This document shows, one piece after another, positions 1-64,000 of a DNA stretch of 64,000 nt. The translations under genes and the position numbers were made by a program. Every line of letters begins with the position of its first letter. The stretch's first letter is position 1. Below the pieces are notes generated by a model that made no database searches, was not told the origin of the DNA, and was given only the letters and a program-made list of their open reading frames with translations. The stretch spans positions 312,542,001 to 312,606,000 of the forward strand of contig CM097882.1 in assembly GCA_044892505.1 (NCBI GenBank), given 5' to 3'. Origin of the DNA: Schmidtea nova. Taxonomy: Eukaryota.

Positions 1-330
1 TGCTTTTTAAACTCTGTAAATAAAAATTAAAGTAAATATTTTGTAAAGTAATTTTTGTATTAAATATCCAATCTTTTTAATCTGATAAATTGTCTTTGAG
101 AGTTATTAAATTGGGAGACCAAGTATTCTGCAACGTATGTCACTTATTCTAGACTTATCAACTTCAAAAGAATACAGTCGCAAAGCTGGATGACGAAATC
201 CAAAGAACCAGAAACTTCCATTCAGATTGAACAATTATATTTTGACTGTGATTGTTTAGGGACTAATCCATGTTGATTAGATAATCTGTAAAAAAAATAT
301 GTCAAACTTGTTATATTTAATAAATGTTTA
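1..330 (+). mobile_element. E0: 3' UTR end of the RLE non-LTR retrotransposon (cut by window start)
   Basis: Matches the 3' UTR of E2/E7 and ends ...AATAAATGTTTA joined to tRNA nt 19 like all other copies. Confidence 0.93.
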
Positions 331-385
331 TTATCACGTCTGCCTAACACGCAGAAGGTCCCCGGTTCGATCCCGGGTCGAACCA
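331..385 (+). pseudogene. 5'-truncated tRNA-Val(AAC), nt 19-73
   Basis: TTATCACG...GAACCA abuts element 3' end; first 18 nt (5' acceptor strand and box A) absent. Confidence 0.93.
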
Positions 386-565
386 AATTTTTCTCAATTC
401 ATTATTTGACTTTTATTATATTTGCAACTCTTTTTTTAATTCATAACGCAATTTTGTTGTTGAATTCTCTACTTTGTACATAAATTTTATTCAAGTGAAT
501 TCAGTACCTTTTGTCAAGGTAATTCGAAAATCAAACATGCACAACAATTGTTAGTTGAAACTGTC

Positions 566-638
566 GGTTCGATGGTGTAGCGGTTATCACGTCTGCCTAA
601 CACGCAGAAGGTCCCCGGTTCGATCCCGGGTCGAACCA
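566..638 (+). tRNA. trnV(AAC): tRNA-Val(AAC), intronless, eukaryotic type
   Basis: Cloverleaf: acceptor GGTTCGA/TCGAACC, anticodon arm TCTGC-CT AAC AC-GCAGA, T arm CCCGG-TTCGATC-CCGGG, discriminator A73, no encoded CCA. Confidence 0.97.
573..627 (+). promoter_or_regulatory. Pol III type-2 internal promoter: box A (573-583) and box B (617-627); same in every intact copy
   Basis: TGGTGTAGCGG fits box A; GGTTCGATCCC fits box B consensus. Confidence 0.85.
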
Positions 639-640
639 AA

Positions 641-645
641 TTTTT
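641..645 (+). terminator. Pol III oligo-dT terminator (T5), present after every tRNA copy; a T7 run follows in the spacer
   Basis: ...GAACCA-AA-TTTTT-CTC, 3 nt after the discriminator. Confidence 0.8.
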
Positions 646-818
646 CTCAATTCATTATTTGACTTTTATTATATTTGCAACTCTTTTTTTAATTCATAAC
701 GCAATTTTGTTGTTGAATTCTCTACTTTGTACATAAATTTTATTCAAGTGAATTCAGTACATTTTGTCAAGGTAATTCGAAAATCAAACATGCACAACAA
801 TTGTTAGTTGAAACTGTC

Positions 819-891
819 GGTTCGATGGTGTAGCGGTTATCACGTCTGCCTAACACGCAGAAGGTCCCCGGTTCGATCCCGGGTCGAACCA
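819..891 (+). tRNA. trnV(AAC): tRNA-Val(AAC)
   Basis: Identical to 566-638. Confidence 0.97.
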
Positions 892-1071
892 AATTTTTCT
901 CAATTCATTATTTGACTTTTATTATATTTGCAACTCTTTTTTTAATTCATAACGCAATTTTGTTGTTGAATTCTCTACTTTGTACATAAATTTTATTCAA
1001 GTGAATTCAGTACATTTTGTCAAGGTAATTCGAAAATCAAACATGCACAACAATTGTTAGTTGAAACTGTC

Positions 1072-1144
1072 GGTTCGATGGTGTAGCGGTTATCACGTCT
1101 GCCTAACACGCAGAAGGTCCCCGGTTCGATCCCGGGTCGAACCA
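1072..1144 (+). tRNA. trnV(AAC): tRNA-Val(AAC)
   Basis: Identical to 566-638. Confidence 0.97.
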
Positions 1145-1324
1145 AATTTTTCTCAATTCATTATTTGACTTTTATTATATTTGCAACTCTTTTTTTAATT
1201 CATAACGCAATTTTGTTGTTGAATTCTCTACTTTGTACATAAATTTTATTCAAGTGAATTCAGTACATTTTGTCAAGGTAATTCGAAAATCAAACATGCA
1301 CAACAATTGTTAGTTGAAACTGTC

Positions 1325-1397
1325 GGTTCGATGGTGTAGCGGTTATCACGTCTGCCTAACACGCAGAAGGTCCCCGGTTCGATCCCGGGTCGAACCA
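1325..1397 (+). tRNA. trnV(AAC): tRNA-Val(AAC)
   Basis: Identical to 566-638. Confidence 0.97.
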
Positions 1398-1577
1398 AAT
1401 TTTTCTCAATTCATTATTTGACTTTTATTATATTTGCAACTCTTTTTTTAATTCATAACGCAATTTTGTTGTTGAATTCTCTACTTTGTACATAAATTTT
1501 ATTCAAGTGAATTCAGTACATTTTGTCAAGGTAATTCGAAAATCAAACATGCACAACAATTGTTAGTTGAAACTGTC

Positions 1578-2156: not shown

Positions 2157-2285
2157 AATTTTTCTCAATTCATTATTTGACTTTTATTATATTTGCAACT
2201 CTTTTTTTAATTCATAACGCAATTTTGTTGTTGAATTCTCTACTTTGTACATAAATTTTATTCAAGTGAATTCTTTCAAGGTTCG

Positions 2286-4920
2286 ATGACTCAATCACCT
2301 GCTGCTCAGTCAACTGCTGCTGATGTGATGACTCAGTCTATTGGAAATCAGTCAACTGTGACGAAGAAATATGAATTAGAAAACATTCTCAAGTATCAAA
2401 TTTCCAGTTTGCAATGTTTTCAATCGATTTTGGATTATTTTTCGCAACTAAATGGTGGAAATCTCGCTACTGCCTCAGTTCTTTCTGATGCGAATGCAAG
2501 TCAACGGAGTTCTTTCGATCAAGGATCTAAAATTTCTCAAAACCAATCTGATAATATGCCACTTTCTTATGCTGATATTGAGACTAAATTCACTAAATCA
2601 AAGGATTTACTGATTGTCAAGCGCCTGGATTCATTGGAGTCTCAATTTATGAATATGGCTGAAAAGTTAGATTATTTGGTTTCTTTTTTTTAATGGCTCT
2701 GTTGATGATTTATCAGATTTTCCTAAAGTAAATGAAAATAATTTAAATAATAATCCTTTCAATAAAAATAAAGTTTTTGATATCAAAGATAAATTAATTG
2801 TAAATAATGTAGTTTTAGATAAATCAAATATTTCAGAATTTATTGAAAATAATATTGCTAAAATTCCTAATAGTTTAATTGATGTAAATAATAAAATGTG
2901 TAATTCAAATAATAAATTTCTAAATAACCCTAATAAAGAGAATGTTAAACATTTTAATAATCCCAAAGAAACATCTTCAATTGATTTGACTAACGATAAA
3001 ATTATGCCAAATGAAAACATAGAAATAATTATTAAAAATAATAAAAAATCTGTTAAAATTATAGAACCTAATAAAACAACTAAACAGAAGTATGATAAAT
3101 TTGAATTTAAAAATCTGGTTCGTATTTTAACGAAAAGGGAACGCCAGAAAATCTTGAATGCCTTCCCTGCTTTAATACAACTAATTAAAAAGAAAGAATC
3201 ACAGAGTAAATATTTTGAAATTAATAAATTTCTTTCGAGCAAAGATTTTAATGTGAATCACTTGAATTTAAATAATTTTGATTATTTTTTCTATAGAAAT
3301 TGTAATCTTTGTGTATCTTTAAAATTGAACAACGCTCCTGTCATTTTATCAGCACCAAAACCTGTTGTTTTAAAAACTATTAAATTAATTGACCATAATA
3401 TCGTCAAAATAAATTCTGAAATCCCTGACTTTGTTCGAGCTCCAATGTCAATTCGAAGATTTTTATTCAATCTTTCGCACGATCTTTCAAACACTGTTTC
3501 CATCAAGGATGAGAAACACAGGGGAAATAAAATAAATAACATTCTTACTTCAATGAAACATAAACAACAATTACCAGATTATTTAATAAAATCAAACATT
3601 AAATACGAAAATGGTGAGTTCTTATTATTAGATTTGACTAACGATAAAATCAAATTGAACGACGATAATAACTTGATAAAATCAAATTTTTCTGAACTTA
3701 CTAGAAGTCAGATTAAAAATCTTTACTATTCTTATCCTTCTCTTAAGGAAGTTTGTTTCGTTGAAAATCTTGAAACAAGATCATCATCCGTTAGTAAAAT
3801 TATCGAATCTTTAAAGTTAATTAATGAATTTCCAAAAAATATCATTTTTAAAGAGGGTAAATTTTATCAGTCTGATAAAAGAACAATCTCACCTAGTAGT
3901 TCTCCTGACATAATGTTCAACCTTGGTCTTTTTAATTTGGCTAGTATGAGTAGAAAAGATTGTGAATTAAAATCCATTTTAGAGAAGACTGGTTGTGACT
4001 TTAAAATAGTTGAAATAATATTCTACCTCAACTATTTAGGCTTGACTCAATCTTTAGAATTTTGCAAAAATCAAACTTATTCTGATTATGTGAGGAATTA
4101 CGTCTGTAATTGCTGCTTGATAAACTCACTCTGTAGTATTGCTGATGTTGATTCGCTTTCATCTGAAGATTTTGAGGGTTGGGCGACCGAAATTGTTCAG
4201 AAAATCCCAGTTTCTTCCTATTACTTCAATAGCTGCCAGGAAAAGCTTTTAAAGCTGAAGCAATGGGACATTTCAACTAAAATCAAAAGAATCCATAACG
4301 TTATTTCACCTGAAATAATATCTTATTTAAATAACTTTCTTGACTCTGTAGACGTAAAATTTCCATCTAAGTCTCAACAACATAATATTCTAATTAAATT
4401 AATGAAAGCTATCAATGACATTAAAATTTTTGATGACATACACGGAAATAAAGCAAAAAGACTTGTTTACTTTTTGCTAAGAGATGCCAAGAAATATTTG
4501 AATAAAAATCAACGATTCAGATTATTTGAATCGAGCAATAAATATTGCACTTCAGAGATGGAGAATATAATTTCAGTAATAATTGAGAACCTTACCAAAG
4601 TTACTGACCATGAAGTTACTACTCCTGAAATCACAGTTGAAGAAACGCCAATTGAAATAACTTGTGATCCTGAACCTATCGTCTTGATTAAGGAAATAAA
4701 CTGTTTAAAATGTAACAATATCATCGAAAAATGCATTCTTGTTAGAGATGGAACAAACGTCAACATCTGTGAAAGCTGTCTATTTGACGCAATTACCTTT
4801 GAAAAGCCGATTCCTGAAGCTACTAATTCGGATATCGAAGAAAATATAGAAACAAATTGTAAGAAATCTTGTCCAAGACCTAGAAAAACAGACAAGAAAA
4901 CATCAACCAAAGCAAAATGA
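2286..4920 (+). pseudogene. E1 ORF1, +1 frameshift at T8 (2684-2691); fragments 2286-2693 (135 aa) and 2896-4920 (674 aa)
   Basis: Colinear with the intact 877-aa ORF1 of E3/E5/E6/E7 except for one extra T. Confidence 0.88.
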
Positions 4921-4926
4921 AGATGT

Positions 4927-7900
4927 GTGCCTGCATCAGCTCAATCGTCTGCCATTCCCTCTAATGAGACTGATGCAGAGAGCACAACTAAAAATAATAT
5001 TTCAACTATCGACAATCGTGATCCTGAAGTGTGGTTTTCTGATAATGATATTGATTGGTATCTTGAAAACCACATTGATAATCCAATGCATGGATATATT
5101 AAATGCTTTATAGTAAATATCATCTGTTCTAACATCACAGAAGATATTGTTGAAATTCCACCATCTATTAGCAATGCTGAAATTGTATTTTGTCCACTCA
5201 ACATTAACAATTCGCACTGGATTCTTTTTGTTTATAGTAAGAAAATGTTATCTTCTTACTTTATTGACCCAATCCTTGCAAACAGACAAAAGCCAATCAA
5301 TAAACAAATGGCTCAGAGAATTAACCTAAAACTGAATAGATTTTTTAATCTAAATATATCTGTGTCCCGACATCCACACAAACATCTTGAATATCAAAAT
5401 AACAGCTTTGATTGTGGCCCATTTACGTGTGCTTATGCTGTGATTATCAGTAAAGATTTGAACAGCTTTCCAAATGGGTTCATAGAGAAAATTCGTACCA
5501 GTGTGCATGAAAATCAAAATCGTATGCAAATAACCGAATCCACCTTATTCGCTGGTACTAACTCCAAGATGGACATGACCAAAATAAATATCAAGAAAGC
5601 CCTTGCAAAAAAGAAAGTCATCACCAACACCTCAGATATGACCAAAGTATTGAACACTCAAAAACCGTGTGTGTCATCAATAATTAGTAAATATTACGAA
5701 AGTAATTCTAAAATAACAGTCTTATCTGCCGAACTAACTTTAAACCTAATTGCACAAAATACCTCCTTCATAGCTGATAATGTCACTTTCAAGCAGTTCA
5801 AAGGAATCGATCATGTTATAAGTATCATTCCTAAATTTAACGATTGGTGTCTCTTTGTCTATTCGAATAAACTTGACAGGAGCTACATGTTCGACTTCAA
5901 TTATCGAAACATTGATGAAAGGCTAATTGAAATTGGTGAAAAGATAACTGAATATCTGAATCAATTCACTCTTGTTTCTAAAATAAAATTCACACCTCAT
6001 CATAGAATTTCTCATCCAACATTTCATTCTTACGATGATCAATATTTTGCAAGTTCTTTTATTGTATTTTTTGAGAAACTTGTCTTTGAAAGAATACTGG
6101 ACAATGATAAGGTTTATGACTCATTAAGTGCTCTAAAATATCAGTCTTGTAAAGATCTTTCTCCTAGCCTAAGTTTCATTAATGGTAAAATATCCGACAA
6201 AATTATTGAGGAATATTTTGCTAGCCTAAACTTATCGACCAAATATATTCTTCTAAACACAACAATGTGTACTGCGCTTTCAGATGATTGCACTGAATAC
6301 TTGAAAGACTTTGTAAACATTGAGTGCATGATGAAGGCTACTATAATCTTTGTAATCATTTCTCCTCCAAGAGCCAACGACTTGCTCATGGTTATTGATT
6401 ACGACGCTGATGAGCACTATTTATTAAGCCCAGTCACTAATGACTTGTTCGTTATGACTGAAGGATTCTGCTATAAATTACTAATTAAAATTAATGAGAT
6501 TAGAGAGAGCACAGGACGTTCCTTGAAATCGCGTAATTGTCGACATGACGTTAAAGGTTCTGGCTTATTTAGTAGGTTATTAATCTGTGCCTTTATTAAA
6601 TATTATGCATTTGACCGATCTCTAGAAAATATCAATCTTCATGAAATTGGCAAAATTATCTACTCACTTGTGCCATTAGTTGATAAAAATGATAATGCTG
6701 AGGAAGAAAGACGACTAAAATCAAAAGCTGTAAACTCTTTAAAACTAAATTTAAAACAGCGAATAGAAAAAGCCAATAATCTTATAATTTCACTTGAACA
6801 CGCCAGTATTGATGAAATCATAAGTGGCATTCTTTCAAATATTCCTCGTCTTAAAGATTTGAACACCGATCACATTCGTACACCATATTTAGGTACTAAA
6901 ATAGAAAAAGCTAGAAAATTCAAAAATTCCACTGAATTTCTGTCAAACATGAAAAAGACTGTGTATAGGATTTTGGGTAATAACACAGAATCAATTGCAC
7001 CTCCTTTTCAGGAAATTATTGACACTTTCAGTCATCCTGATACATTACCTAGAAATTGGGAAAACATCTTAAAATTCACTAAGAGTTCTAAATTTAGTCT
7101 TGAATTAAATCCAATGACACCTAAAGAAATCCTTTCAAGTCTTTGCAAAGCTGACAACACTTCTCCAGGTCTTGATAATGTTTGTTATAAAGATCTTTTG
7201 TTATTAGACCCTGAATGTAAATTGCTAGCTTTTCTGTACAATAAAATCCTAAAATTAGACATTATTCCTACAAGTTGGAAATCATTTAAAACCATACTAA
7301 TCCCCAAACCAGATAAAAATGGCCAATATCATAAAATATATTCTTGGCGACCAATTGCCTTATTATCTGTCATTTACAAAGTCTTCGCTTCAGTTTTGGC
7401 AAATCGTCTAAGCTTATGGATAAGAAATAATTCCATGTTACACATTGGCCAAAAGGGTGGTTCGGAGTACGAAGGATGTATTGAACACAACTCTATTCTT
7501 TCTGCTATCGTCGAACATTCAAAATACAGCAAGTCTTCACCTTTAACGATAGCTTGGCTAGACATCAAAGATGCCTTCGGAAGTGTTCCACATGACTACA
7601 TGTGGACACTGTTAAAACACATAAATGTTAGTGATAGGTTTGTAGGAATTTTAAAACTGCTCTATACTGATACAAGCTCGTTTTATTGTTGCAATAAAAT
7701 GCAGACACCGGATATTCCAATAAAGAAAGGAGTTAAACAAGGTTGTCCGATCTCAATGATATTGTTTGCAATAGCTATTAACCCAGTACTTGAGTCTATT
7801 AATCTATCAAACGTTAATACTTTTACGATTGGAACATCTCCGGTACAGGTGTTGGCTTATGCGGATGATATCGCACTTATCGCGACAAATACCTCTGATC

Positions 7901-9537: not shown

Positions 9538-9542
9538 ATAAT

Positions 9543-9556
9543 TATATATATATATA
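9543..9556. repeat. (TA)7 tract at the start of the 3' UTR ((TA)8 in E6)
   Basis: Directly visible after the ORF2 stop in every complete copy. Confidence 0.85.
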
Positions 9557-9891
9557 AATATTTGCTTTTTAAACTCTGTAAATAAAATTTAAGGTAAATA
9601 TTTTGTAAAGTAATTTTTGTATTAAATATCCAATCTTTTTAATCTGATAAATTGTCTTTGAGAGTTATTAAATTGGGAGACCAAGTATTCTGCGACGTAT
9701 GTCACTTATTCTAGAATTATCAACTTCAAAAGAATACAGTCGCAAAGCTGGATGACGAAATCCAAAGAACCAGAAACTTCCATTCAGATTGAACAATTAT
9801 ATTTTGACTGTGATTGTTTAGGGACTAATCCATGTTGATTAGATAATCTGTAAAAAAATATGTCAAACTTGTTATATTTAATAAATGTTTA

Positions 9892-9946
9892 TTATCACGT
9901 CTGCCTAACACGCAGAAGGTCCCCGGTTCGATCCCGGGTCGAACCA
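9892..9946 (+). pseudogene. 5'-truncated tRNA-Val(AAC), nt 19-73
   Basis: Abuts E1 3' end. Confidence 0.93.
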
Positions 9947-10958: not shown

Positions 10959-11087
10959 AATTTTTCTCAATTCATTATTTGACTTTTATTATATTTGCAA
11001 CTCTTTTTTTAATTCATAACGCAATTTTGTTGTTGAATTCTCTACTTTGTACATAAATTTTATTCAAGTGAATTCTTTCAAGGTTCG

Positions 11088-13722: not shown

Positions 13723-13728
13723 AGATGT

Positions 13729-18339: not shown

Positions 18340-18694
18340 ATAATTATATATATATATAAATATTTGCTTTTTAAACTCTGTAAATAAAAATTAAAGTAAA
18401 TATTTTGTAAAGTAATTTTTGTATTAAATATCCAATCTTTTTAATCTGATAAATTGTCTTTGAGAGTTATTAAATTGGGAGACCAAGTATTCTGCAACGT
18501 ATGTCACTTATTCTAGACTTATCAACTTCAAAAGAATACAGTCGCAAAGCTGGATGACGAAATCCAAAGAACCAGAAACTTCCATTCAGATTGAACAATT
18601 ATATTTTGACTGTGATTGTTTAGGGACTAATCCATGTTGATTAGATAATCTGTAAAAAAAATATGTCAAACTTGTTATATTTAATAAATGTTTA

Positions 18695-18749
18695 TTATCA
18701 CGTCTGCCTAACACGCAGAAGGTCCCCGGTTCGATCCCGGGTCGAACCA
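18695..18749 (+). pseudogene. 5'-truncated tRNA-Val(AAC), nt 19-73
   Basis: Abuts E2 3' end. Confidence 0.93.
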
Positions 18750-19255: not shown

Positions 19256-19384
19256 AATTTTTCTCAATTCATTATTTGACTTTTATTATATTTGCAACTC
19301 TTTTTTTAATTCATAACGCAATTTTGTTGTTGAATTCTCTACTTTGTACATAAATTTTATTCAAGTGAATTCTTTCAAGGTTCG

Positions 19385-43329: not shown

Positions 43330-43384
43330 TTATCACGTCTGCCTAACACGCAGAAGGTCCCCGGTTCGATCCCGGGTCGAACCA
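43330..43384 (+). pseudogene. 5'-truncated tRNA-Val(AAC), nt 19-73
   Basis: Abuts E5 3' end. Confidence 0.93.
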
Positions 43385-44143: not shown

Positions 44144-44272
44144 AATTTTTCTCAATTCATTATTTGACTTTTATTATATTTGCAACTCTTTTTTTAATTC
44201 ATAACGCAATTTTGTTGTTGAATTCTCTACTTTGTACATAAATTTTATTCAAGTGAATTCTTTCAAGGTTCG

Positions 44273-46906: not shown

Positions 46907-46912
46907 AGATGT

Positions 46913-51523: not shown

Positions 51524-51880
51524 ATAATTATATATATATATATAAATATTTGCTTTTTAAACTCTGTAAATAAAATTTAAGGTAAATATTTTGTAAAGTA
51601 ATTTTTGTATTAAATATCCAATCTTTTTAATCTGATAAATTGTCTTTGAGAGTTATTAAATTGGGAGACCAAGTATTCTGCGACGTATGTCACTTATTCT
51701 AGAATTATCAACTTCAAAAGAATACAGTCGCAAAGCTGGATGACGAAATCCAAAGAACCAGAAACTTCCATTCAGATTGAACAATTATATTTTGACTGTG
51801 ATTGTTTAGGGACTAATCCATGTTGATTAGATAATCTGTAAAAAAAATATGTCAAACTTGTTATATTTAATAAATGTTTA

Positions 51881-51935
51881 TTATCACGTCTGCCTAACAC
51901 GCAGAAGGTCCCCGGTTCGATCCCGGGTCGAACCA
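51881..51935 (+). pseudogene. 5'-truncated tRNA-Val(AAC), nt 19-73
   Basis: Abuts E6 3' end. Confidence 0.93.
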
Positions 51936-53453: not shown

Positions 53454-53582
53454 AATTTTTCTCAATTCATTATTTGACTTTTATTATATTTGCAACTCTT
53501 TTTTTAATTCATAACGCAATTTTGTTGTTGAATTCTCTACTTTGTACATAAATTTTATTCAAGTGAATTCTTTCAAGGTTCG

Positions 53583-56216: not shown

Positions 56217-56222
56217 AGATGT

Positions 56223-59200
56223 GTGCCTGCATCAGCTCAATCGTCTGCCATTCCCTCTAATGAGACTGATGCAGAGAGCACAACTAAAAATAATATTTCA
56301 ACTATCGACAATCGTGATCCTGAAGTGTGGTTTTCTGATAATGATATTGATTGGTATCTTGAAAACCACATTGATAATCCAATGCATGGATATATTAAAT
56401 GCTTTATAGTAAATATCATCTGTTCTAACATCACAGAAGATATTGTTGAAATTCCACCATCTATTAGCAATGCTGAAATTGTATTTTGTCCACTCAACAT
56501 TAACAATTCGCACTGGATTCTTTTTGTTTATAGTAAGAAAATGTTATCTTCTTACTTTATTGACCCAATCCTTGCAAACAGACAAAAGCCAATCAATAAA
56601 CAAATGGCTCAGAGAATTAACCTAAAACTGAATAGATTTTTTAATCTAAATATATCTGTGTCCCGACATCCACACAAACATCTTGAATATCAAAATAACA
56701 GCTTTGATTGTGGCCCATTTACGTGTGCTTATGCTGTGATTATCAGTAAAGATTTGAACAGCTTTCCAAATGGGTTCATAGAGAAAATTCGTACCAGTGT
56801 GCATGAAAATCAAAATCGTATGCAAATAACCGAATCCACCTTATTCGCTGGTACTAACTCCAAGATGGACATGACCAAAATAAATATCAAGAAAGCCCTT
56901 GCAAAAAAGAAAGTCATCACCAACACCTCAGATATGACCAAAGTATTGAACACTCAAAAACCGTGTGTGTCATCAATAATTAGTAAATATTACGAAAGTA
57001 ATTCTAAAATAACAGTCTTATCTGCCGAACTAACTTTAAACCTAATTGCACAAAATACCTCCTTCATAGCTGATAATGTCACTTTCAAGCAGTTCAAAGG
57101 AATCGATCATGTTATAAGTATCATTCCTAAATTTAACGATTGGTGTCTCTTTGTCTATTCGAATAAACTTGACAGGAGCTACATGTTCGACTTCAATTAT
57201 CGAAACATTGATGAAAGGCTAATTGAAATTGGTGAAAAGATAACTGAATATCTGAATCAATTCACTCTTGTTTCTAAAATAAAATTCACACCTCATCATA
57301 GAATTTCTCATCCAACATTTCATTCTTACGATGATCAATATTTTGCAAGTTCTTTTATTGTATTTTTTGAGAAACTTGTCTTTGAAAGAATACTGGACAA
57401 TGATAAGGTTTATGACTCATTAAGTGCTCTAAAATATCAGTCTTGTAAAGATCTTTCTCCTAGCTTAAGTTTCATTAATGGTAAAATATCCGACAAAATT
57501 ATTGAGGAATATTTTGCTAGCCTAAACTTATCGACCAAATATATTCTTCTAAACACAACAATGTGTACTGCGCTTTCAGATGATTGCACTGAATACTTGA
57601 AAGACTTTGTAAACATTGAGTGCATGATGAAGGCTACTATAATCTTTGTAATCATTTCTCCTCCAAGAGCCAACGACTTGCTCATGGTTATTGATTACGA
57701 CGCTGATGAGCACTATTTATTAAGCCCAGTCACTAATGACTTGTTCGTTATGACTGAAGGATTCTGCTATAAATTACTAATTAAAATTAATGAGATTAGA
57801 GAGAGCACAGGTCGTTCCTTGAAATCGCGTAATTGTCGACATGACGTTAAAGGTTCTGGCTTATTTAGTAGGTTATTAATCTGTGCCTTTATTAAATATT
57901 ATGCATTTGACCGATCTCTAGAAAATATCAATCTTCATGAAATTGGCAAAATTATCTACTCACTTGTGCCATTAGTTGATAAAAATGATAATGCTGAGGA
58001 AGAAAGACGACTAAAATCAAAAGCTGTAAACTCTTTAAAACTAAATTTAAAACAGCGAATAGAAAAAGCCAATAATCTTATAATTTCACTTGAACACGCC
58101 AGTATTGATGAAATCATAAGTGGCATTCTTTCAAATATTCCTCGTCTTAAAGATTTGAACACCGATCACATTCGTACACCATATTTAGGTACTAAAGTAG
58201 AAAAAGCTAGAAAATTCAAAAATTCCACTGAATTTCTGTCAAACATGAAAAAGACTGTGTATAGGATTTTGGGTAACAACACAGAATCAATTGCACCTCC
58301 TTTTCAGGAAATTATTGACACTTTCAGTCATCCTGATACATTACCTAGAAATTGGGAAAACATCTTTAAATTCACTAAGAGTTCTAAATTTAGTCTTGAA
58401 TTAAATCCAATGACACCTAAAGAAATCCTTTCAAGTCTTTGCAAAGCTGACAACACTTCTCCAGGTCTTGATAATGTTTGTTATAAAGATCTTTTGCTAT
58501 TAGACCCTGAATGTAAATTGCTAGCTTTTCTGTACAATAAAATCCTAAAATTAGACATTATTCCTACAAGTTGGAAATCATTTAAAACCATACTAATCCC
58601 TAAACCAGATAAAAATGGCCAATATCATAAAATATATTCTTGGCGACCAATTGCCTTATTATCTGTCATTTACAAAGTCTTCGCTTCAGTTTTGGCAAAT
58701 CGTCTAAGCTTATGGATAAGAAATAATTCCATGTTACACATTGGCCAAAAGGGTGGTTCGGAGTACGAAGGATGTATTGAACACAACTCTATTCTTTCTG
58801 CTATCGTCGAACATTCAAAATACAGCAAGTCTTCACCTTTAACAATAGCTTGGCTAGACATCAAAGATGCCTTCGGAAGTGTTCCACATGACTACATGTG
58901 GACACTGTTAAAACACATAAATGTTAGTGATAGGTTTGTAGGAATTTTAAAACTGCTCTATACTGATACAAGCTCGTTTTATTGTTGCAATAAAATGCAG
59001 ACACCGGATATTCCAATAAAGAAAGGAGTTAAACAAGGTTGTCCGATCTCAATGATATTGTTTGCAATAGCTATTAACCCAGTACTTGAGTCTATTAATC
59101 TATCAAACGTTAATCCTTTTACGATTGGAACATCTCCGGTACAGGTGTTGGCTTATGCGGATGATATCGCACTTATCGCGACAAATACCTCTGATCTGCA

Positions 59201-60833
59201 AATACTCATAAACGTTGCTGTAAACACCGCTAAAACAATTGGATTTGAATATCGTCCAGAAAAGTGCGCTTATATGCAATACCCTAAAATAGAAACTGTA
59301 AGCGAGATTTCTGTCAACAATGTTCTTATAAAAAAGATTGCAACAAATGAATTTTACCAATACTTGGGAGTACCAATAGGTGACAATAATGACCAAAGTC
59401 CCTATGAAATTCTAAGCAAAGTAATTGAAGACACAAAGAAAATAGCAAATTCTGATCTTTACGGCTGGCAAAAACTTAAAGCGTATAAGGTCTTTCTGCA
59501 TTCTCGCTTGATTTTTCCATTTAGAACTAGGGAAATCAAAACAAGTTCTTTAGCTGATTCGAGTAAAAATTCAAAATTAAATGTAAATAATACGAGTATT
59601 TTGAGGAGTCATCTTAGAAAAATATTGCACTTGCCACACTACTCTGAGATTAGCTATTTTTATAATTCTACTGAAAACGGCGGTGCAGGCTGCATAGACT
59701 TACTTGACGAGTATCATACACAGACAATCGTGTACTTTTTCCGCTTGTTAACATCAACGTGCGAATATTCGAAAAAGATAAATACTGACTCGCTTTTATT
59801 TGTCACAAGTCCGAGACTCGGAATCAAAAATCCAGTTCTTAAACAAAGTTTAGAATGGATAAATGGAAAAGAGAGCAAGAAAAACAACAGTGGTTGCAAA
59901 ACTCGATTTTATCGGTTGCGATCATCCATTGCTTACTTTTCTAAAGTTCACAACATTAAATTGTTATTTGAAACAGTGAAAGGGAATCCTTCTATCCGTA
60001 TAACCACTACACTTAAGGGAACACGTATATTATTACCAACATTAAGAAAAGCATTGTCAATGATTTTACATTCAGCTCTCCAGGATTCGTATCTCGAGAA
60101 ATGGGAGAATAGCAACCATAATAATCTGCTTGTATCTGCGATTAAACTCTGTCCACTTGTCAACAAGCTTATTTTCCGCAGTGATTTGACAGAATTTGAA
60201 TGGAGATTCGTCCATCGAGCAAGAACGAATACATTATCAATATTTGCGAAGCCATATAAAACTGGCGAAAATCGTCTTTGTCGTAGATGTAAGCTTGAAG
60301 ACGAGACTTTATCACACGTTCTTCAAACTTGTAAAATGAACAAATCTTTGGCAACTAGTCGACATAACGCTTGCTTAGAAAAAATAAAAAGCGAGTTGAA
60401 AGATCCAAACTTGTTAGTTGTTGCGGATCATAAATGTTCCCTAGTACCGACATCAACTGAACGCGTTGATTTAATAATAACCAATAATGATAAAAAGACC
60501 ATATTATTGGTAGACATGAAATGCCCAATCGATTCGGTGCCCAACTTTGACTTGGCTGATAAAAAAAACATAGAAAAGTATGATAAACTAAAATCGGAAA
60601 TTAAAATAGCCAAACCCGATTATAAAGTTGAGTTGTTTACCTGCATCATAGGCTCATTAGGATCCATTGAAATTAAAACACCTGATCTTTTAGTAAAAAT
60701 GGGCGTAAAAGAAAATAAAGTAAAACGTCTGATGAAAGAGTGTGCAATTAGCAATATTGCGCACTCGGCCAAAATTTGGTACTTTCATACCAATGGCTTT
60801 CTTCCAGATAATATAAGACAAACTTTTAAATAA
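56223..60833 (+). CDS. E7 ORF2 (Ulp1-RT-CCHC-RLE)
   Basis: Intact, same motifs. Confidence 0.95.
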   Translation: MPASAQSSAIPSNETDAESTTKNNISTIDNRDPEVWFSDNDIDWYLENHIDNPMHGYIKCFIVNIICSNITEDIVEIPPSISNAEIVFCPLNINNSHWILFVYSKKMLSSYFIDPILANRQKPINKQMAQRINLKLNRFFNLNISVSRHPHKHLEYQNNSFDCGPFTCAYAVIISKDLNSFPNGFIEKIRTSVHENQNRMQITESTLFAGTNSKMDMTKINIKKALAKKKVITNTSDMTKVLNTQKPCVSSIISKYYESNSKITVLSAELTLNLIAQNTSFIADNVTFKQFKGIDHVISIIPKFNDWCLFVYSNKLDRSYMFDFNYRNIDERLIEIGEKITEYLNQFTLVSKIKFTPHHRISHPTFHSYDDQYFASSFIVFFEKLVFERILDNDKVYDSLSALKYQSCKDLSPSLSFINGKISDKIIEEYFASLNLSTKYILLNTTMCTALSDDCTEYLKDFVNIECMMKATIIFVIISPPRANDLLMVIDYDADEHYLLSPVTNDLFVMTEGFCYKLLIKINEIRESTGRSLKSRNCRHDVKGSGLFSRLLICAFIKYYAFDRSLENINLHEIGKIIYSLVPLVDKNDNAEEERRLKSKAVNSLKLNLKQRIEKANNLIISLEHASIDEIISGILSNIPRLKDLNTDHIRTPYLGTKVEKARKFKNSTEFLSNMKKTVYRILGNNTESIAPPFQEIIDTFSHPDTLPRNWENIFKFTKSSKFSLELNPMTPKEILSSLCKADNTSPGLDNVCYKDLLLLDPECKLLAFLYNKILKLDIIPTSWKSFKTILIPKPDKNGQYHKIYSWRPIALLSVIYKVFASVLANRLSLWIRNNSMLHIGQKGGSEYEGCIEHNSILSAIVEHSKYSKSSPLTIAWLDIKDAFGSVPHDYMWTLLKHINVSDRFVGILKLLYTDTSSFYCCNKMQTPDIPIKKGVKQGCPISMILFAIAINPVLESINLSNVNPFTIGTSPVQVLAYADDIALIATNTSDLQILINVAVNTAKTIGFEYRPEKCAYMQYPKIETVSEISVNNVLIKKIATNEFYQYLGVPIGDNNDQSPYEILSKVIEDTKKIANSDLYGWQKLKAYKVFLHSRLIFPFRTREIKTSSLADSSKNSKLNVNNTSILRSHLRKILHLPHYSEISYFYNSTENGGAGCIDLLDEYHTQTIVYFFRLLTSTCEYSKKINTDSLLFVTSPRLGIKNPVLKQSLEWINGKESKKNNSGCKTRFYRLRSSIAYFSKVHNIKLLFETVKGNPSIRITTTLKGTRILLPTLRKALSMILHSALQDSYLEKWENSNHNNLLVSAIKLCPLVNKLIFRSDLTEFEWRFVHRARTNTLSIFAKPYKTGENRLCRRCKLEDETLSHVLQTCKMNKSLATSRHNACLEKIKSELKDPNLLVVADHKCSLVPTSTERVDLIITNNDKKTILLVDMKCPIDSVPNFDLADKKNIEKYDKLKSEIKIAKPDYKVELFTCIIGSLGSIEIKTPDLLVKMGVKENKVKRLMKECAISNIAHSAKIWYFHTNGFLPDNIRQTFK

Positions 60834-61188
60834 ATAATTATATATATATATAAATATTTGCTTTTTAAACTCTGTAAATAAAAATTAAAGTAAATATTTT
60901 GTAAAGTAATTTTTGTATTAAATATCCAATCTTTTTAATCTGATAAATTGTCTTTGAGAGTTATTAAATTGGGAGACCAAGTATTCTGCAACGTATGTCA
61001 CTTATTCTAGACTTATCAACTTCAAAAGAATACAGTCGCAAAGCTGGATGACGAAATCCAAAGAACCAGAAACTTCCATTCAGATTGAACAATTATATTT
61101 TGACTGTGATTGTTTAGGGACTAATCCATGTTGATTAGATAATCTGTAAAAAAAATATGTCAAACTTGTTATATTTAATAAATGTTTA

Positions 61189-61243
61189 TTATCACGTCTG
61201 CCTAACACGCAGAAGGTCCCCGGTTCGATCCCGGGTCGAACCA
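61189..61243 (+). pseudogene. 5'-truncated tRNA-Val(AAC), nt 19-73
   Basis: Abuts E7 3' end. Confidence 0.93.
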
Positions 61244-61423
61244 AATTTTTCTCAATTCATTATTTGACTTTTATTATATTTGCAACTCTTTTTTTAATTC
61301 ATAACGCAATTTTGTTGTTGAATTCTCTACTTTGTACATAAATTTTATTCAAGTGAATTCAGTACATTTTGTCAAGGTAATTCGAAAATCAAACATGCAC
61401 AACAATTGTTAGTTGAAACTGTC

Positions 61424-61496
61424 GGTTCGATGGTGTAGCGGTTATCACGTCTGCCTAACACGCAGAAGGTCCCCGGTTCGATCCCGGGTCGAACCA
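61424..61496 (+). tRNA. trnV(AAC): tRNA-Val(AAC)
   Basis: Identical to 566-638. Confidence 0.97.
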
Positions 61497-61676
61497 AATT
61501 TTTCTCAATTCATTATTTGACTTTTATTATATTTGCAACTCTTTTTTTAATTCATAACGCAATTTTGTTGTTGAATTCTCTACTTTGTACATAAATTTTA
61601 TTCAAGTGAATTCAGTACATTTTGTCAAGGTAATTCGAAAATCAAACATGCACAACAATTGTTAGTTGAAACTGTC

Positions 61677-61749
61677 GGTTCGATGGTGTAGCGGTTATCA
61701 CGTCTGCCTAACACGCAGAAGGTCCCCGGTTCGATCCCGGGTCGAACCA
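61677..61749 (+). tRNA. trnV(AAC): tRNA-Val(AAC)
   Basis: Identical to 566-638. Confidence 0.97.
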
Positions 61750-61929
61750 AATTTTTCTCAATTCATTATTTGACTTTTATTATATTTGCAACTCTTTTTT
61801 TAATTCATAACGCAATTTTGTTGTTGAATTCTCTACTTTGTACATAAATTTTATTCAAGTGAATTCAGTACATTTTGTCAAGGTAATTCGAAAATCAAAC
61901 ATGCACAACAATTGTTAGTTGAAACTGTC

Positions 61930-62002
61930 GGTTCGATGGTGTAGCGGTTATCACGTCTGCCTAACACGCAGAAGGTCCCCGGTTCGATCCCGGGTCGAAC
62001 CA
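61930..62002 (+). tRNA. trnV(AAC): tRNA-Val(AAC)
   Basis: Identical to 566-638. Confidence 0.97.
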
Positions 62003-62182
62003 AATTTTTCTCAATTCATTATTTGACTTTTATTATATTTGCAACTCTTTTTTTAATTCATAACGCAATTTTGTTGTTGAATTCTCTACTTTGTACATAA
62101 ATTTTATTCAAGTGAATTCAGTACATTTTGTCAAGGTAATTCGAAAATCAAACATGCACAACAATTGTTAGTTGAAACTGTC

Positions 62183-62255
62183 GGTTCGATGGTGTAGCGG
62201 TTATCACGTCTGCCTAACACGCAGAAGGTCCCCGGTTCGATCCCGGGTCGAACCA
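62183..62255 (+). tRNA. trnV(AAC): tRNA-Val(AAC)
   Basis: Identical to 566-638. Confidence 0.97.
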
Positions 62256-62435
62256 AATTTTTCTCAATTCATTATTTGACTTTTATTATATTTGCAACTC
62301 TTTTTTTAATTCATAACGCAATTTTGTTGTTGAATTCTCTACTTTGTACATAAATTTTATTCAAGTGAATTCAGTACATTTTGTCAAGGTAATTCGAAAA
62401 TCAAACATGCACAACAATTGTTAGTTGAAACTGTC

Positions 62436-62508
62436 GGTTCGATGGTGTAGCGGTTATCACGTCTGCCTAACACGCAGAAGGTCCCCGGTTCGATCCCGGG
62501 TCGAACCA
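62436..62508 (+). tRNA. trnV(AAC): tRNA-Val(AAC)
   Basis: Identical to 566-638. Confidence 0.97.
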
Positions 62509-62625
62509 AATTTTTCTCAATTCATTATTTGACTTTTATTATATTTGCAACTCTTTTTTTTATTCATAACGCAATTTTGTTGTTGAATTCTCTACTTTGT
62601 ACATAAATTTTATTCAAGTGAATTC

Positions 62626-64000
62626 TTTCAAGGTTCGATGACTCAATCACCTGCTGCTCAGTCAACTGCTGCTGATGTAATGACTCAGTCTATTGCAAAT
62701 CAGTCAACTGTGACGAAGCAATATGAATTAGAAAACATTCTCAAATATCAAATTTCCAGTTTGCAATATTTTCAATCGATTTTGGATTATTTTTCTCAAC
62801 TAAATGGTGGAAATCTCGCTACTGCCTCAGTTCTATCTGATGCGAATGCAAGTCAACGGAGTTCTTTCGATCAAGGATCTAAAATTTCTCCAAACCAATC
62901 TGATAATATGCCACTTTCTTATGCTGATATTGAGACTAAATTCACTAAATCAAAGGATTTACTTATTGTCAAGCGCCTGGATTCATTGGAGTCTCAATTT
63001 ATGAATATGGCTGAAAAGTTAGATTATTTGGTTTCTTTGTTTAATGGCTCTGTTGATGATTTATCAGATTTTCCTAAAGTAAATGAAAATAATTTAAATA
63101 ATAATCCTTTCAATAAAAATAAAGTTTTTGATATCAAAGATAAATTAATTGTAAATAATGTAGTTTTAGATAAATCAAATATTTCAGAATTTATTGAAAA
63201 TAATATTGCTAAAATTCCTAATAGTTTAATTGATGTAAATAATAAAATGTGTAATTCAAATAATAAATTTCTAAATAACCCTAATAAAGAGAATGTTAAA
63301 CATTTTAATAATCCCAAAGATACATCTTCAATTGATTTGACTAACGATAAAATTATGCCAAATGAAAACATAGAAATAATTATTAAAAATAATAAAAAAT
63401 CTGTTAAAATTATAGAACTTTATAAAACAACTAAACAGAAGTATGATAAATTTGAATTTAAAAGTCTGGTTCGTATTTTAACGAAAAGGGAACGCCAGAA
63501 AATCTTGAATGCCTTCCCTGCTTTAATACAACTAATTAAAAAGAAAGAATCACAGAGTAAATATTTTGAAATTAATAAATTTCTTTCGAGCAAAGATTTT
63601 AATGTGAATCACTTGAATTTAATTAATTTTGATTATTTTTTCTATAGAAATTGTAATCTTTGTGTATCTTTAAAATTGAACAACGCTCCTGTCATTTCAT
63701 CAGCACCAAAACCTGTTGTTTTAAAAACTATTAAATTAATTGACCATAATATCGTCAAAATAAATTCTGAAATCCCTGACTTTGTTCGAGCTCCAATGTC
63801 AATTCGAAGATTTTTATTCAATCTTTCGCACGATCTTTCAAACACTGTTTCCATCAAGGATGAGAAACACAGGGGAAATAAAATAAATAACATTCTTACT
63901 TCAATGAAACATAAACAACAATTACCAGATTATTTAATAAAATCAAACATTAAATACGAAAATGGTGAGTTCTTATTATTAGATTTGACTAACGATAAAA
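62626..64000 (+). mobile_element. E8: 5' part of the RLE retrotransposon (cut by window end)
   Basis: Same 5' junction GAATTC|TTTCAAGGTTCGATG; E3-like haplotype. Confidence 0.93.
62638..64000 (+). CDS. E8 ORF1, partial (runs off the window)
   Basis: ATG at 62638; TTTGTTT allele keeps the frame open. Confidence 0.85.
   Translation, partial: MTQSPAAQSTAADVMTQSIANQSTVTKQYELENILKYQISSLQYFQSILDYFSQLNGGNLATASVLSDANASQRSSFDQGSKISPNQSDNMPLSYADIETKFTKSKDLLIVKRLDSLESQFMNMAEKLDYLVSLFNGSVDDLSDFPKVNENNLNNNPFNKNKVFDIKDKLIVNNVVLDKSNISEFIENNIAKIPNSLIDVNNKMCNSNNKFLNNPNKENVKHFNNPKDTSSIDLTNDKIMPNENIEIIIKNNKKSVKIIELYKTTKQKYDKFEFKSLVRILTKRERQKILNAFPALIQLIKKKESQSKYFEINKFLSSKDFNVNHLNLINFDYFFYRNCNLCVSLKLNNAPVISSAPKPVVLKTIKLIDHNIVKINSEIPDFVRAPMSIRRFLFNLSHDLSNTVSIKDEKHRGNKINNILTSMKHKQQLPDYLIKSNIKYENGEFLLLDLTNDK

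What the first reader, a model, noticed from the sequence alone, without database searches (positions are those of the whole stretch)
1..64000. tRNA-Val(AAC) array colonised by a sequence-specific, protease-carrying RLE retrotransposon
Seen: nine copies of one ~7.62-kb element, all sense to the tRNA genes, with identical junctions inside a 253-bp tRNA-Val unit; 8 of 38 visible tRNA units are disrupted. ORF2 reads Ulp1-RT-CCHC-RLE. Known: this domain order is that of C. elegans NeSL-1 (SL1-targeting); RLE elements such as R2 (28S), R5 (planarian rDNA) and Utopia (U2) target multicopy RNA genes; tRNA-array targeting has precedent among APE elements (Dewa in fish). I also recall NeSL-group planarian Repbase families reported in tRNA genes, which I cannot verify here. 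Inference: a young, probably active, possibly undescribed tRNA-Val-specific family and a candidate new site-specific integration tool.
Basis: partly seen in the sequence, partly recalled or inferred. Interest (0 to 1): 0.85.

Follow-up and report, generated by a model that had tools for sequence, protein, structure and literature searches.

The report
tRNA-Val-targeting protease-bearing retrotransposon in array
A tandem array of valine tRNA genes carries nine near-identical copies of a 7.6-kb jumping gene of the NeSL/R5-LIN kind, a kind already known to target tRNA genes in flatworms, which seems to make its enzymes by reading through a stop codon.

Summary
The window holds 30 intact, identical tRNA-Val(AAC) genes in a 253-bp tandem unit. 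It also holds 7 complete element copies (7618-7620 bp) and 2 partial copies cut by the window edges. All are sense to the tRNAs, and all junctions are identical.

The element has an RT, a CCHC finger and a restriction-like endonuclease (RLE), preceded by a Ulp1-type protease. Copies are 99.3-99.9% identical. ORF2 is intact in all 7 and ORF1 in 4 of 7. Differences between copies are mostly synonymous in ORF2 (12 N : 29 S), so functional lineages have been replicating.

Relatives from other samples end inside the D loop of tRNA-Val(AAC) or tRNA-Phe(GAA), which supports real target specificity. Flatworm NeSL-clade families specific for tRNA-Arg and tRNA-Glu are already published (Kojima & Jurka 2015), so this is a new member of a known kind.

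New details found here:
- ORF1 and ORF2 share one frame, split by a TGA conserved in 11 relatives and followed by a covarying stem-loop. This points to programmed readthrough.
- There are three tandem Ulp1-like domains, and only the first is catalytic.
- ORF1's ATG lies in a 9-nt relic of the tRNA 5' end.
- The junction offset is -81 or +172 bp, unresolved.

Some copies probably spread by array recombination.

The parts
1..64000 (+). Tandem array of 253-bp tRNA-Val(AAC) units (73-nt gene plus 180-bp spacer): 30 intact genes and 22 complete units, interrupted by the element copies
   Evidence: only 5 single-base variant sites across all complete and partial units
1..330 (+). Partial copy p0: last 330 bp (3' UTR) of an element cut by the window edge
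   Evidence: identical to copies 2 and 7 over this stretch
2274..9891 (+). Element copy 1 (7618 bp)
2286..4920 (+). ORF1 of copy 1, broken by one frameshift
11076..18694 (+). Element copy 2 (7619 bp)
11088..13722 (+). ORF1 of copy 2, broken by one frameshift
19373..26990 (+). Element copy 3 (7618 bp), both ORFs open; used as the reference copy for the sub-parts below
19373..19384 (+). 12 nt between the array flank and ORF1's ATG. Its last 6 nt plus the ATG equal tRNA-Val nt 1-9. Present at all 8 visible 5' junctions
19385..22018 (+). ORF1 (877 aa plus TGA). No known domain; fast-evolving; homologous to ORF1 of relatives at 17-32% identity
22016..22018 (+). In-frame TGA separating ORF1 from ORF2. 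Present in all 7 full copies and in 11 related loci
22025..22083 (+). Conserved RNA stem-loop (13 bp in two helices) starting 6 nt after the TGA
   Evidence: 95.7% of cells paired, 5 pairs with compensatory changes, 0/500 shuffles reach this, slid controls 14-39%
22019..26635 (+). ORF2 (1538 codons open, plus stop), same frame as ORF1, no conserved ATG at its start
22121..22633 (+). Ulp1-like domain 1 (aa 35-205), catalytic; H99, D116, Q159 and C165 invariant in 13 sequences
22643..22654 (+). Gly-Gly/Ala-Gly motif in the disordered linker after domain 1; candidate protease cleavage site (inference)
   Evidence: GG or AG at these columns in 11 of the 12 sequences that cover them; linker pLDDT <50
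22754..23254 (+). Ulp1-like domain 2 (aa 246-412); none of the four catalytic positions of domain 1 is conserved here
   Evidence: (hhalign D1-D2 E=2e-5)
23255..23788 (+). Ulp1-like domain 3 (aa 413-590); none of the four catalytic positions of domain 1 is conserved here
   Evidence: (D1-D3 E=1.5e-5; D2-D3 E=3e-7)
24392..25171 (+). Reverse transcriptase domain (aa 792-1051), with Y-A-D-D invariant
26081..26134 (+). CCHC zinc finger (C1355, C1358, H1367, C1372 invariant)
26264..26464 (+). Restriction-like endonuclease core (D1418, D1433, K1435 invariant); aligns to the R2 endonuclease
26636..26990 (+). 3' UTR. It ends with an AATAAA-containing terminal motif conserved in relatives (28/32 nt identical to L001). 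There is no poly(A) tail
27416..35033 (+). Element copy 4 (7618 bp)
27428..30062 (+). ORF1 of copy 4, broken by one frameshift
35712..43329 (+). Element copy 5 (7618 bp), both ORFs open
44261..51880 (+). Element copy 6 (7620 bp), both ORFs open
53571..61188 (+). Element copy 7 (7618 bp), both ORFs open
62626..64000 (+). Partial copy p9: first 1375 bp (5' part of ORF1), identical to copy 3 over this stretch
331..385 (+). 5'-truncated tRNA-Val remnant (gene nt 19-73) downstream of p0
9892..9946 (+). tRNA-Val remnant (nt 19-73) downstream of copy 1
18695..18749 (+). tRNA-Val remnant downstream of copy 2
26991..27045 (+). tRNA-Val remnant downstream of copy 3
35034..35088 (+). tRNA-Val remnant downstream of copy 4
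43330..43384 (+). tRNA-Val remnant downstream of copy 5
51881..51935 (+). tRNA-Val remnant downstream of copy 6
61189..61243 (+). tRNA-Val remnant downstream of copy 7

Best explanation
This is a young family of RLE-type non-LTR retrotransposon, very probably still replicating, from the NeSL clade in the broad sense (the flatworm R5/LIN lineage). It integrates by target-primed reverse transcription into the D-loop region of tRNA-Val(AAC) genes. Shown: the element always ends so that the downstream flank begins at tRNA nt 19, so the antisense strand is nicked opposite nt 18/19 and that 3' end primes cDNA synthesis from a conserved, AATAAA-containing 3' terminus. Shown: the second junction lies at one fixed place, 81 bp upstream or, equivalently in the array, 172 bp downstream. 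Inferred: second-strand cleavage is therefore precise and far from the first nick. Inferred: if it is the 172-bp duplication, the upstream tRNA gene stays whole and only a promoter-less remnant is added. Expression, inferred from sequence: one mRNA encodes ORF1 (877 aa, unknown fold). Behind a conserved UGA followed by a stem-loop, occasional readthrough yields an ORF1-ORF2 polyprotein. A catalytic Ulp1-type cysteine protease sits directly after the readthrough point. It probably cuts the polyprotein, for instance at a conserved Gly-Gly/Ala-Gly linker motif. That would release a module of two inactive Ulp1-like domains, RT, CCHC finger and RLE. The layout resembles retroviral gag-stop-pro-pol. 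Within the array, unequal crossing-over and gene conversion also shuffle and copy the insertions.
For: Anatomy and junctions. Domains: Pfam RVT_1 and Peptidase_C48. The best solved relatives are R2 proteins (E=3e-53), with the CCHC and endonuclease D..D.K aligned. Catalytic residues of protease, RT, CCHC and RLE are invariant in 13 sequences. Youth and function: 99.3-99.9% identity; ORF2 open in 7/7 and ORF1 in 4/7. Among 78 variable sites, ORF2 has 12 non-synonymous against 29 synonymous changes, where neutrality predicts about 79% non-synonymous (binomial p=9e-12). ORF1 has 19:11 (p=0.02). No stop alleles occur. Specificity beyond this array: relative L003 (ORF2 43% identical, another sample) abuts tRNA-Val(AAC) from nt 15 in a dispersed Val-AAC/CAC/TAC cluster. 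L006 abuts tRNA-Phe(GAA) in its D loop. L001 abuts a D-arm-like string. The literature records tRNA-Arg and tRNA-Glu specific planarian LIN families, and the LIN25_SM 3' end resembles ours. Readthrough: TGA sits at the ORF boundary in all window copies and in 11 related loci. The stem-loop is 95.7% paired with 5 covarying pairs and 0/500 shuffles reaching this. ORF2 has no conserved ATG at its start. A more distant relative has a single fused 2421-aa ORF. No SECIS or ribozyme hit was found. Three Ulp1-like domains. Long offset precedent within the clade: a 72-bp duplication flanks L002, with 0 mismatches against 2-4 in other units.
Against: No transcript, protein or insertion-polymorphism data exist, so activity, readthrough and cleavage are all inferred. 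All 8 5' junctions share an odd 12-nt insert and one offset, and no copy is 5'-truncated; that is also what recombinational copying of a single insertion would give. A rare flank variant is shared by the flanks of two same-type copies. The arms of the stem-loop also encode conserved residues (V-P-A and A-D/E), so part of their conservation is protein-level. ORF1 carries a frameshift in 3 of 7 copies. No DNA-binding domain that could read the tRNA gene was identified. Placement in the NeSL clade rests on architecture, 3'-end likeness and literature, not on a phylogeny with named references. The host organism is unknown.
Confidence: 0.75

Rival explanations
1. One insertion, or very few, into a tRNA-Val unit was multiplied by unequal crossing-over or segmental duplication of the array. 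On this view the nine copies say nothing about target specificity, and the element need not be active now.
For: All 8 5' junctions carry the same 12-nt insert and the same offset. No uninserted unit shows that spacer variant. There are no 5'-truncated copies. A rare unit variant (unit position 195) occurs only in the flanks downstream of p0 and copy 2, which carry the same element type. Variant patterns are mosaic, as recombination would produce.
Against: Differences between copies are strongly biased to synonymous sites in ORF2 (12:29, p=9e-12). Neutral decay after duplication would not give that. Element copies differ by 0.07-0.7%, whereas array units are almost invariant. Relatives in other samples sit at the same place in tRNA-Val and at the matching place in tRNA-Phe. 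As a contributor this process is likely; as the sole explanation it is unlikely.
Confidence: 0.15
2. ORF2 is not made by stop-codon readthrough. It would come instead from termination-reinitiation, internal initiation at a downstream Met, or a separate transcript. The conserved stem-loop would serve another role, such as RNA packaging or protein binding.
For: Non-LTR elements with two ORFs are known to use termination-reinitiation, for example SART1 and LINE-1 (PMC5972666). In SART1 a downstream structure is needed for this. The first ATG of ORF2 lies 55 codons in.
Against: ORF1 and ORF2 share a frame across 11 relatives with only one stop between them. The stop is always TGA, usually followed by C or A. 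The codons right after the stop are conserved at protein level, with no conserved ATG. A distant relative has one fused ORF. A stem-loop 6 nt after a leaky UGA is the classic readthrough arrangement (established knowledge of viral readthrough signals).
Confidence: 0.2
3. The multi-copy structure is an assembly artefact: a repeat wrongly expanded or stitched together.
For: Long, near-identical repeats in tandem arrays are hard to assemble. The single-base length difference that breaks ORF1 in 3 copies could be a sequencing error.
Against: The copies carry distinct, structured variant sets (5-53 differences). They are separated by different numbers of units (4, 2, 1, 2, 3, 6, 5). The window contains no N.
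Confidence: 0.05

Closest known systems
Planarian LIN families of the R5/LIN lineage, NeSL clade (LIN15_SM in tRNA-Arg, LIN25_SM in tRNA-Glu; Kojima & Jurka 2015, PMC4640811)
   Same: These are RLE non-LTR elements of flatworms that insert at fixed sites inside tRNA genes, in sense orientation and without a poly(A) tail. Their 3' ends are AT-rich and contain AATAAA. The LIN25_SM 3' end shown in that paper's S6 Fig closely resembles this element's last ~45 nt.
   Different: The target here is tRNA-Val(AAC), which that paper does not list. Coding sequences of the LIN families were not available, so identity, ORF layout and protease content could not be compared.
NeSL-1 of Caenorhabditis elegans (Malik & Eickbush 2000; as summarised in PMC4640811)
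   Same: A Ulp1-like cysteine protease lies N-terminal to RT, with a zinc finger and RLE at the C-terminus. It is site-specific for a multicopy small-RNA gene (spliced leader).
   Different: The target differs. Here there is a separate 877-aa ORF1 joined in frame through a TGA, and three Ulp1-like domains instead of one reported. No NeSL-1 sequence came back as a named hit, so homology of the protease domains was not tested directly.
R2 elements (solved structures 9nl2, 9nl3, 9dou, 8gh6)
   Same: The RT-CCHC-RLE core is the closest solved relative (E=3e-53). Both use target-primed reverse transcription into a multicopy RNA gene, with a precise 3' junction.
   Different: R2 has a single ORF with N-terminal zinc-finger/Myb DNA-binding motifs, no protease, and a 28S target with a 2-bp cleavage offset. 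None of these holds here, and no ribozyme was detected at the 5' end.
R9 of bdelloid rotifers (Gladyshev & Arkhipova 2009; known to me only from its title in the reference list of PMC13580325)
   Same: [quoted passage not shown] This is a precedent for the 72-bp duplication around relative L002 and the possible 172-bp duplication here.
   Different: R9 has a 28S rDNA target and belongs to the R2 group. The paper itself was not read.
Retroviral gag-stop-pro-pol expression (e.g. gammaretroviruses; established knowledge)
   Same: An in-frame stop is followed a few nucleotides later by an RNA structure, with a protease encoded directly after the stop and RT behind it.
   Different: The retroviral case is an unrelated element class with an aspartic rather than a CE-clan cysteine protease. 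It is an analogy of layout only, with no homology claimed.

Membership tests
NeSL clade sensu Kojima & Jurka 2015 (NeSL-1, R5/LIN, Utopia) | RT followed by a CCHC zinc finger and a restriction-like (PD-D/ExK) endonuclease, with no AP endonuclease | tested here: met
   CCHC and D..D.K are invariant and align to the R2 RLE. Pfam finds no APE domain.
NeSL clade sensu Kojima & Jurka 2015 | Ulp1-like cysteine protease N-terminal to RT (reported for NeSL-1 and Utopia-1_TSP, not for all members) | tested here: met
   Peptidase_C48 E=6e-7. Foldseek top hits are NEDP1, SENP and Ulp1. The H/D/Q/C positions are invariant.
NeSL clade sensu Kojima & Jurka 2015 | RT phylogeny places it with NeSL-1/R5/LIN rather than R2, R4, CRE or HERO | not testable with these tools
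   No named NeSL-1, R5 or LIN protein came back from any search, and Repbase is not available. Only an unnamed clade of Ulp1+RT proteins could be defined.
NeSL clade, R5/LIN lineage of flatworms | Site-specific insertion in multicopy RNA genes, including tRNA genes | tested here: met
   This array; relatives in tRNA-Val and tRNA-Phe; literature.
NeSL clade, R5/LIN lineage of flatworms | Host is a flatworm | tested here: inconclusive
   The source is unknown. The only hints are 31% GC and a 3' end like LIN25_SM. Sample accessions of the relatives are in no paper held.
R2 clade | Single ORF with N-terminal zinc-finger/Myb DNA-binding motifs; 28S rDNA target | tested here: not met
   There are two ORFs in one frame. 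The N-terminus consists of Ulp1-like domains, with no ZF or Myb hit. The target is a tRNA gene.
   No Exo_endo_phos hit was found, and an RLE is present instead.
Programmed stop-codon readthrough signals (structure-stimulated type) | Leaky stop context, a conserved downstream RNA structure within ~8 nt, and a conserved in-frame downstream ORF | tested here: met
   TGA is followed by C or A in 10 of 11 relatives. The stem starts 6 nt downstream and covaries. ORF2 is in frame in all.
Programmed stop-codon readthrough signals | Readthrough product actually made | not testable with these tools
   This needs ribosome-profiling or proteomic data.

The most novel reading that the evidence does not exclude
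A whole clade of flatworm-type RLE retrotransposons would express its enzymes the way a retrovirus does. Programmed UGA readthrough, stimulated by a downstream stem-loop, would feed into a CE-clan (Ulp1-like) protease that processes an ORF1-protease-RT-endonuclease polyprotein. In addition, the clade would cleave the second DNA strand 72-172 bp downstream of the first nick. Each insertion into a tRNA gene would then regenerate an intact gene copy upstream, making the element harmless to its target. I found neither feature described for non-LTR elements in the papers I could search.
Probability: 0.35. Interest if true: 0.65.

Novelty: new member of a known kind. Interest (0 to 1): 0.5.

Why it matters
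Site-specific RLE retrotransposons are the model for target-primed reverse transcription and are being developed for gene insertion (reviews PMC13580325, PMC12203849). A family with open reading frames, a 73-nt well-defined target and close relatives that have switched between tRNA-Val, tRNA-Phe and a satellite offers a natural series for asking how target recognition changes. The conserved TGA plus stem-loop and the protease placed right behind it would, if confirmed, add stop-codon readthrough and proteolytic processing to the known ways non-LTR elements set their ORF1:ORF2 ratio. The junction offset raises the question of whether the element spares its host gene. None of this changes the category: tRNA-targeting NeSL-clade elements in flatworms are already on record.

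Tried and rejected
- **ORF1 function.** Pfam gave no hit. A PDB profile search gave nothing. The word-indexed protein search found no homologue. A single-sequence AlphaFold model was useless (pLDDT 34).
- **5' self-cleaving ribozyme, tRNA-like fold or SECIS.** The Rfam E-value scan and ARAGORN found only the tRNAs.
- **More junctions from public collections.** The metagenome scan gave one 1.1-kb fragment. Junction-pattern scans of prokaryote genomes and viral contigs gave nothing.
- **Naming the host.** The sample accessions appear in no paper held.
- **RT phylogeny with named NeSL-1, R5, Utopia, R2 and R4.** This was not possible because no named references were retrievable. A search with the N-terminal region returned only P0002. 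Fell et al. 2025 and Malik & Eickbush 2000 are not held.
- **Rejected readings.**
  - APE-type (Dewa-like) element: no APE domain.
  - R2 membership: architecture and target do not fit.
  - The TGA as a recent inactivating mutation: it is conserved in 11 relatives.
  - A spacer origin for the 12-nt 5' insert: this needs three gaps, whereas the match to tRNA nt 1-9 is exact.
  - An early ORF-listing script printed open-frame bounds that bracket the frameshift in three copies.
  - I first noticed the Gly-Gly motif and the degenerate third domain in a consensus line that the alignment tool printed by itself. The claims in this report rest instead on per-sequence counts and the invariant-column lists.

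Full report
**1. The observation**

ARAGORN finds 30 tRNA-Val(AAC) genes, all on the + strand. All 30 are identical 73-mers, and the window contains no N. Successive genes are 253 bp apart except at seven gaps of 8043-8045 bp.

Extending the 253-bp unit into each gap from both sides defines seven insertions of 7618-7620 bp: 2274-9891, 11076-18694, 19373-26990, 27416-35033, 35712-43329, 44261-51880 and 53571-61188. The window starts with the last 330 bp of another copy and ends with the first 1375 bp of a ninth.

The 5' junction string occurs 8 times and the 3' junction string 8 times, with none expected by chance. Whole copies differ by 5-53 mismatches and at most 4 gap columns, which is 99.3-99.9% identity.

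**2. Junction anatomy**

- Upstream of every copy, the array runs through a complete tRNA gene and 117 bp of spacer, to unit position 190.
- Downstream, the array resumes at tRNA nt 19, in the D loop.
- In a perfect tandem array this equals either an 81-bp target deletion or a 172-bp target duplication, and the window cannot tell them apart. The one unit variant that could have told them apart lies next to the copy whose other flank is outside the window.
- Between unit position 190 and ORF1's ATG lie 12 nt. The last six of these plus the ATG are exactly tRNA-Val nt 1-9. The start codon of ORF1 is therefore a relic of the tRNA's own 5' end.
- In relative L002 the element begins exactly at an ATG whose first 12 nt match ours at 11 positions. 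It is flanked by a 72-bp repeat of its 201-bp satellite target. The two flanking blocks are identical, while other units differ at 2-4 positions. That supports a true long duplication in this clade.
- The reference list of PMC13580325 cites an RLE element (R9) that makes an exceptionally long duplication. I know that paper by title only.
- Under the duplication reading, each insertion leaves an intact tRNA gene with its T-run terminator upstream. It only adds a remnant lacking the A-box region. This follows from the standard layout of tRNA promoters (inference).

**3. Coding capacity**

- In copies 3, 5, 6 and 7 a single frame is open from the ATG for 877 codons (ORF1). A TGA follows, and the same frame then stays open for 1538 codons (ORF2).
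- Copies 1, 2 and 4 each carry one frameshift in ORF1, the same single-base length difference. ORF2 is unbroken in all seven. No copy has a premature stop.
- ORF2 matches Pfam RVT_1 (E=2e-29) and Peptidase_C48 (E=6e-7).
- The best solved relatives are R2 proteins (9nl2, E=3e-53). LINE-1 ORF2p is far weaker.
- The C-terminal 170 residues align to the CCHC finger and endonuclease of R2.
- In an alignment with 12 relatives, the following are invariant:
  - the protease positions H99, D116, Q159 and C165;
  - the RT Y-A-D-D;
  - the finger residues C1355, C1358, H1367 and C1372;
  - the endonuclease residues D1418, D1433 and K1435.

**4. Three Ulp1-like domains**

- An AlphaFold model of ORF2 residues 1-694 was built with 10 relatives (mean pLDDT 71). 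It shows three globular domains, at about 35-205, 246-412 and 413-590, with the same order of helices and strands.
- Foldseek against the PDB returns NEDP1, SENP1/2/5/7 and Ulp1 as top hits.
- Profile-profile comparison links the three segments: D1-D2 E=2e-5, D1-D3 E=1.5e-5, D2-D3 E=3e-7.
- Only the first domain keeps the catalytic residues. The other two are presumably non-catalytic, and their role is unknown.
- The low-confidence linker after domain 1 carries Gly-Gly, or Ala-Gly in this element, at the same columns. This holds in 11 of the 12 sequences that cover the region, amid otherwise unconserved sequence.
- CE-clan proteases (Ulp1/SENP, adenovirus, poxvirus and asfarvirus core proteases) cut after Gly-Gly or Ala-Gly (established knowledge). 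This motif is therefore a candidate processing site (inference).

**5. The TGA and the stem-loop**

- The ORF1-ORF2 boundary is a TGA in the window copies checked (6 of 7 read directly) and in all eleven related loci examined: L001-L006, L009 and L011-L013. For copy 4 the script's search key failed, so its stop codon was not read, but its ORF bounds are the same.
- ORF2 is always in the same frame. The TGA is followed by C in 8 relatives, A in 2 and T in 1.
- Six nucleotides downstream begins a 13-bp stem in two helices. RNAalifold predicts it without prompting.
- With 11 sequences, 95.7% of cells are paired, against 14-39% when the partner is slid by 1-3 columns. Five pairs show changes on both sides, and no shuffle out of 500 reaches the observed covariation.
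- The codons just after the stop are conserved (V-P-A), and there is no conserved ATG.
- A more distant relative (P0017, about 31% identical) has one fused ORF of 2421 aa.
- No SECIS element or ribozyme was detected.
- The simplest reading is programmed UGA readthrough. It would give a minority ORF1-ORF2 fusion with the protease placed directly behind the stop.
- Reviews I could read list termination-reinitiation (SART1, LINE-1) and 2A peptides for non-LTR elements, but not readthrough. My literature coverage is incomplete.

**6. Are the copies independent, and is the family active?**

- Of 78 substitution columns among the seven copies, 67 are shared by two or more copies and 11 are private.
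- ORF2 has 12 non-synonymous and 29 synonymous changes over 3653 and 961 sites, a ratio near 0.11 (binomial p=9e-12). ORF1 has 19 and 11, a ratio near 0.42 (p=0.02).
- Differences that arose after passive duplication would be neutral. These were filtered for function, so several distinct functional lineages contributed copies.
- The array units are almost invariant (five variant sites in all units), while the elements differ by up to 0.7%.
- Against full independence:
  - the variant patterns are mosaic;
  - partial copy p0 and copy 2 share both their element type and a flank variant seen nowhere else;
  - no copy is 5'-truncated;
  - all copies share the 12-nt insert.
- I conclude that both retrotransposition and array recombination shaped the locus, as is known for R2 in rDNA (established knowledge).

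**7. Specificity judged from relatives**

- Neither search of the protein collection found anything closer than 59% identity. One was word-indexed (5.8 billion sequence clusters at 90% identity). The other was exhaustive (1.84 billion representatives of clusters at 50% identity). Beyond that lies a set of unnamed Ulp1+RT proteins of 1450-1540 aa from metagenome and read-archive assemblies.
- Their contigs show the same ORF1-TGA-ORF2 layout.
- L003 (43% identical) ends against tRNA-Val(AAC) nt 15 onward. It sits in a dispersed cluster of Val-AAC, Val-CAC and Val-TAC genes, so it is an independent insertion four bases from ours.
- L006 comes from the same sample and is sister to L003 in a rough NJ tree. 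It ends against the D loop of tRNA-Phe(GAA).
- L001 (58% identical) ends against a D-arm-like string before its contig stops.
- L002 sits in a satellite.
- The last 32 nt of our element and L001 are 28/32 identical, although the proteins are 58% identical. All relatives keep AATAAA a few bases from the end. This fits a cis-acting 3' end recognised by the RT (inference).

**8. Comparison with what is known**

- Kojima & Jurka 2015 (PMC4640811) place the planarian R5/LIN lineage in the NeSL clade. They report LIN9/24/26_SM in 28S, LIN15_SM in tRNA-Arg, LIN25_SM in tRNA-Glu and NeSL-1_TV in tRNA-Pro. They state that target specificity has diversified in this flatworm lineage.
- Their S6 Fig shows LIN25_SM 3' ends very like ours.
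- tRNA-Val appears in neither the text nor the supplements.
- They also confirm that NeSL families and Utopia-1_TSP carry an N-terminal Ulp1-like protease.
- The element therefore works like, and very probably belongs to, this clade. Formal membership by RT phylogeny could not be tested because no named reference sequence was retrievable.
- It is not an R2, since it lacks the ZF/Myb N-terminus, the single ORF and the 28S target. It is not an APE-type element either.

**9. Verdict**

The finding is real and correctly read. It is a new member of a known kind rather than a new kind. The source organism is unknown, and a flatworm is likely from the 3'-end likeness and base composition only.

No fetched contig looked human.

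Noticed in passing
window 19385-19468 (and the same place in every copy): The first ~14 codons of ORF1 are repeated in tandem: the protein starts M-T-Q-S... twice, 14 residues apart. This suggests a short duplication of the element's extreme 5' end. Relative L002 has only one such start.
   Followed up: partly
L002:1-140 and 7515-8223: A relative (ORF2 45% identical) sits in a 201-bp satellite that matches no tRNA or Rfam family. It is flanked by a 72-bp exact duplication, and the element starts exactly at ORF1's ATG with no 5' UTR.
   Followed up: yes
L003:7043-8315: This is a dispersed cluster of three tRNA-Val isoacceptor genes (AAC, CAC, TAC) with near-identical bodies, next to a truncated Val-AAC remnant. 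Two of the three genes are preceded by CAA, like the 12-nt insert in the window.
   Followed up: partly
L007:128-7393: A more distant relative (about 31% identical) encodes ORF1 and ORF2 as one uninterrupted 2421-aa ORF with no stop at the boundary.
   Followed up: no
window, unit position 195 of the flanks ending at 565 and 18929: A rare A-to-C unit variant is found only in the two flanks downstream of p0 and copy 2, which carry the same element type. This is a footprint of block duplication within the array.
   Followed up: partly
window, all seven full copies: Variant-sharing patterns are mutually incompatible. For example, copy 6 shares sites with copy 3, with copy 7 and with copies 1+4. 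This indicates recombination or gene conversion between copies.
   Followed up: partly
window 22019+ (ORF2 aa 655-660) and relatives: An invariant P-Y-L-G-x-K motif lies between the third Ulp1-like domain and the RT in all 13 sequences. Its function is unknown.
   Followed up: no
window 2667-3242 and 4509-4910, minus strand: Antisense ORFs of 191 and 133 aa lie inside the element. They are probably chance products of AT-rich, low-complexity sequence.
   Followed up: no
L003, L004, L006, L008, L012, L013 (all from sample ERZ27257134): One metagenome sample holds at least six distinct families of this clade, with tRNA-Val and tRNA-Phe among their targets. A single host genome probably carries a radiation of these elements.
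   Followed up: partly
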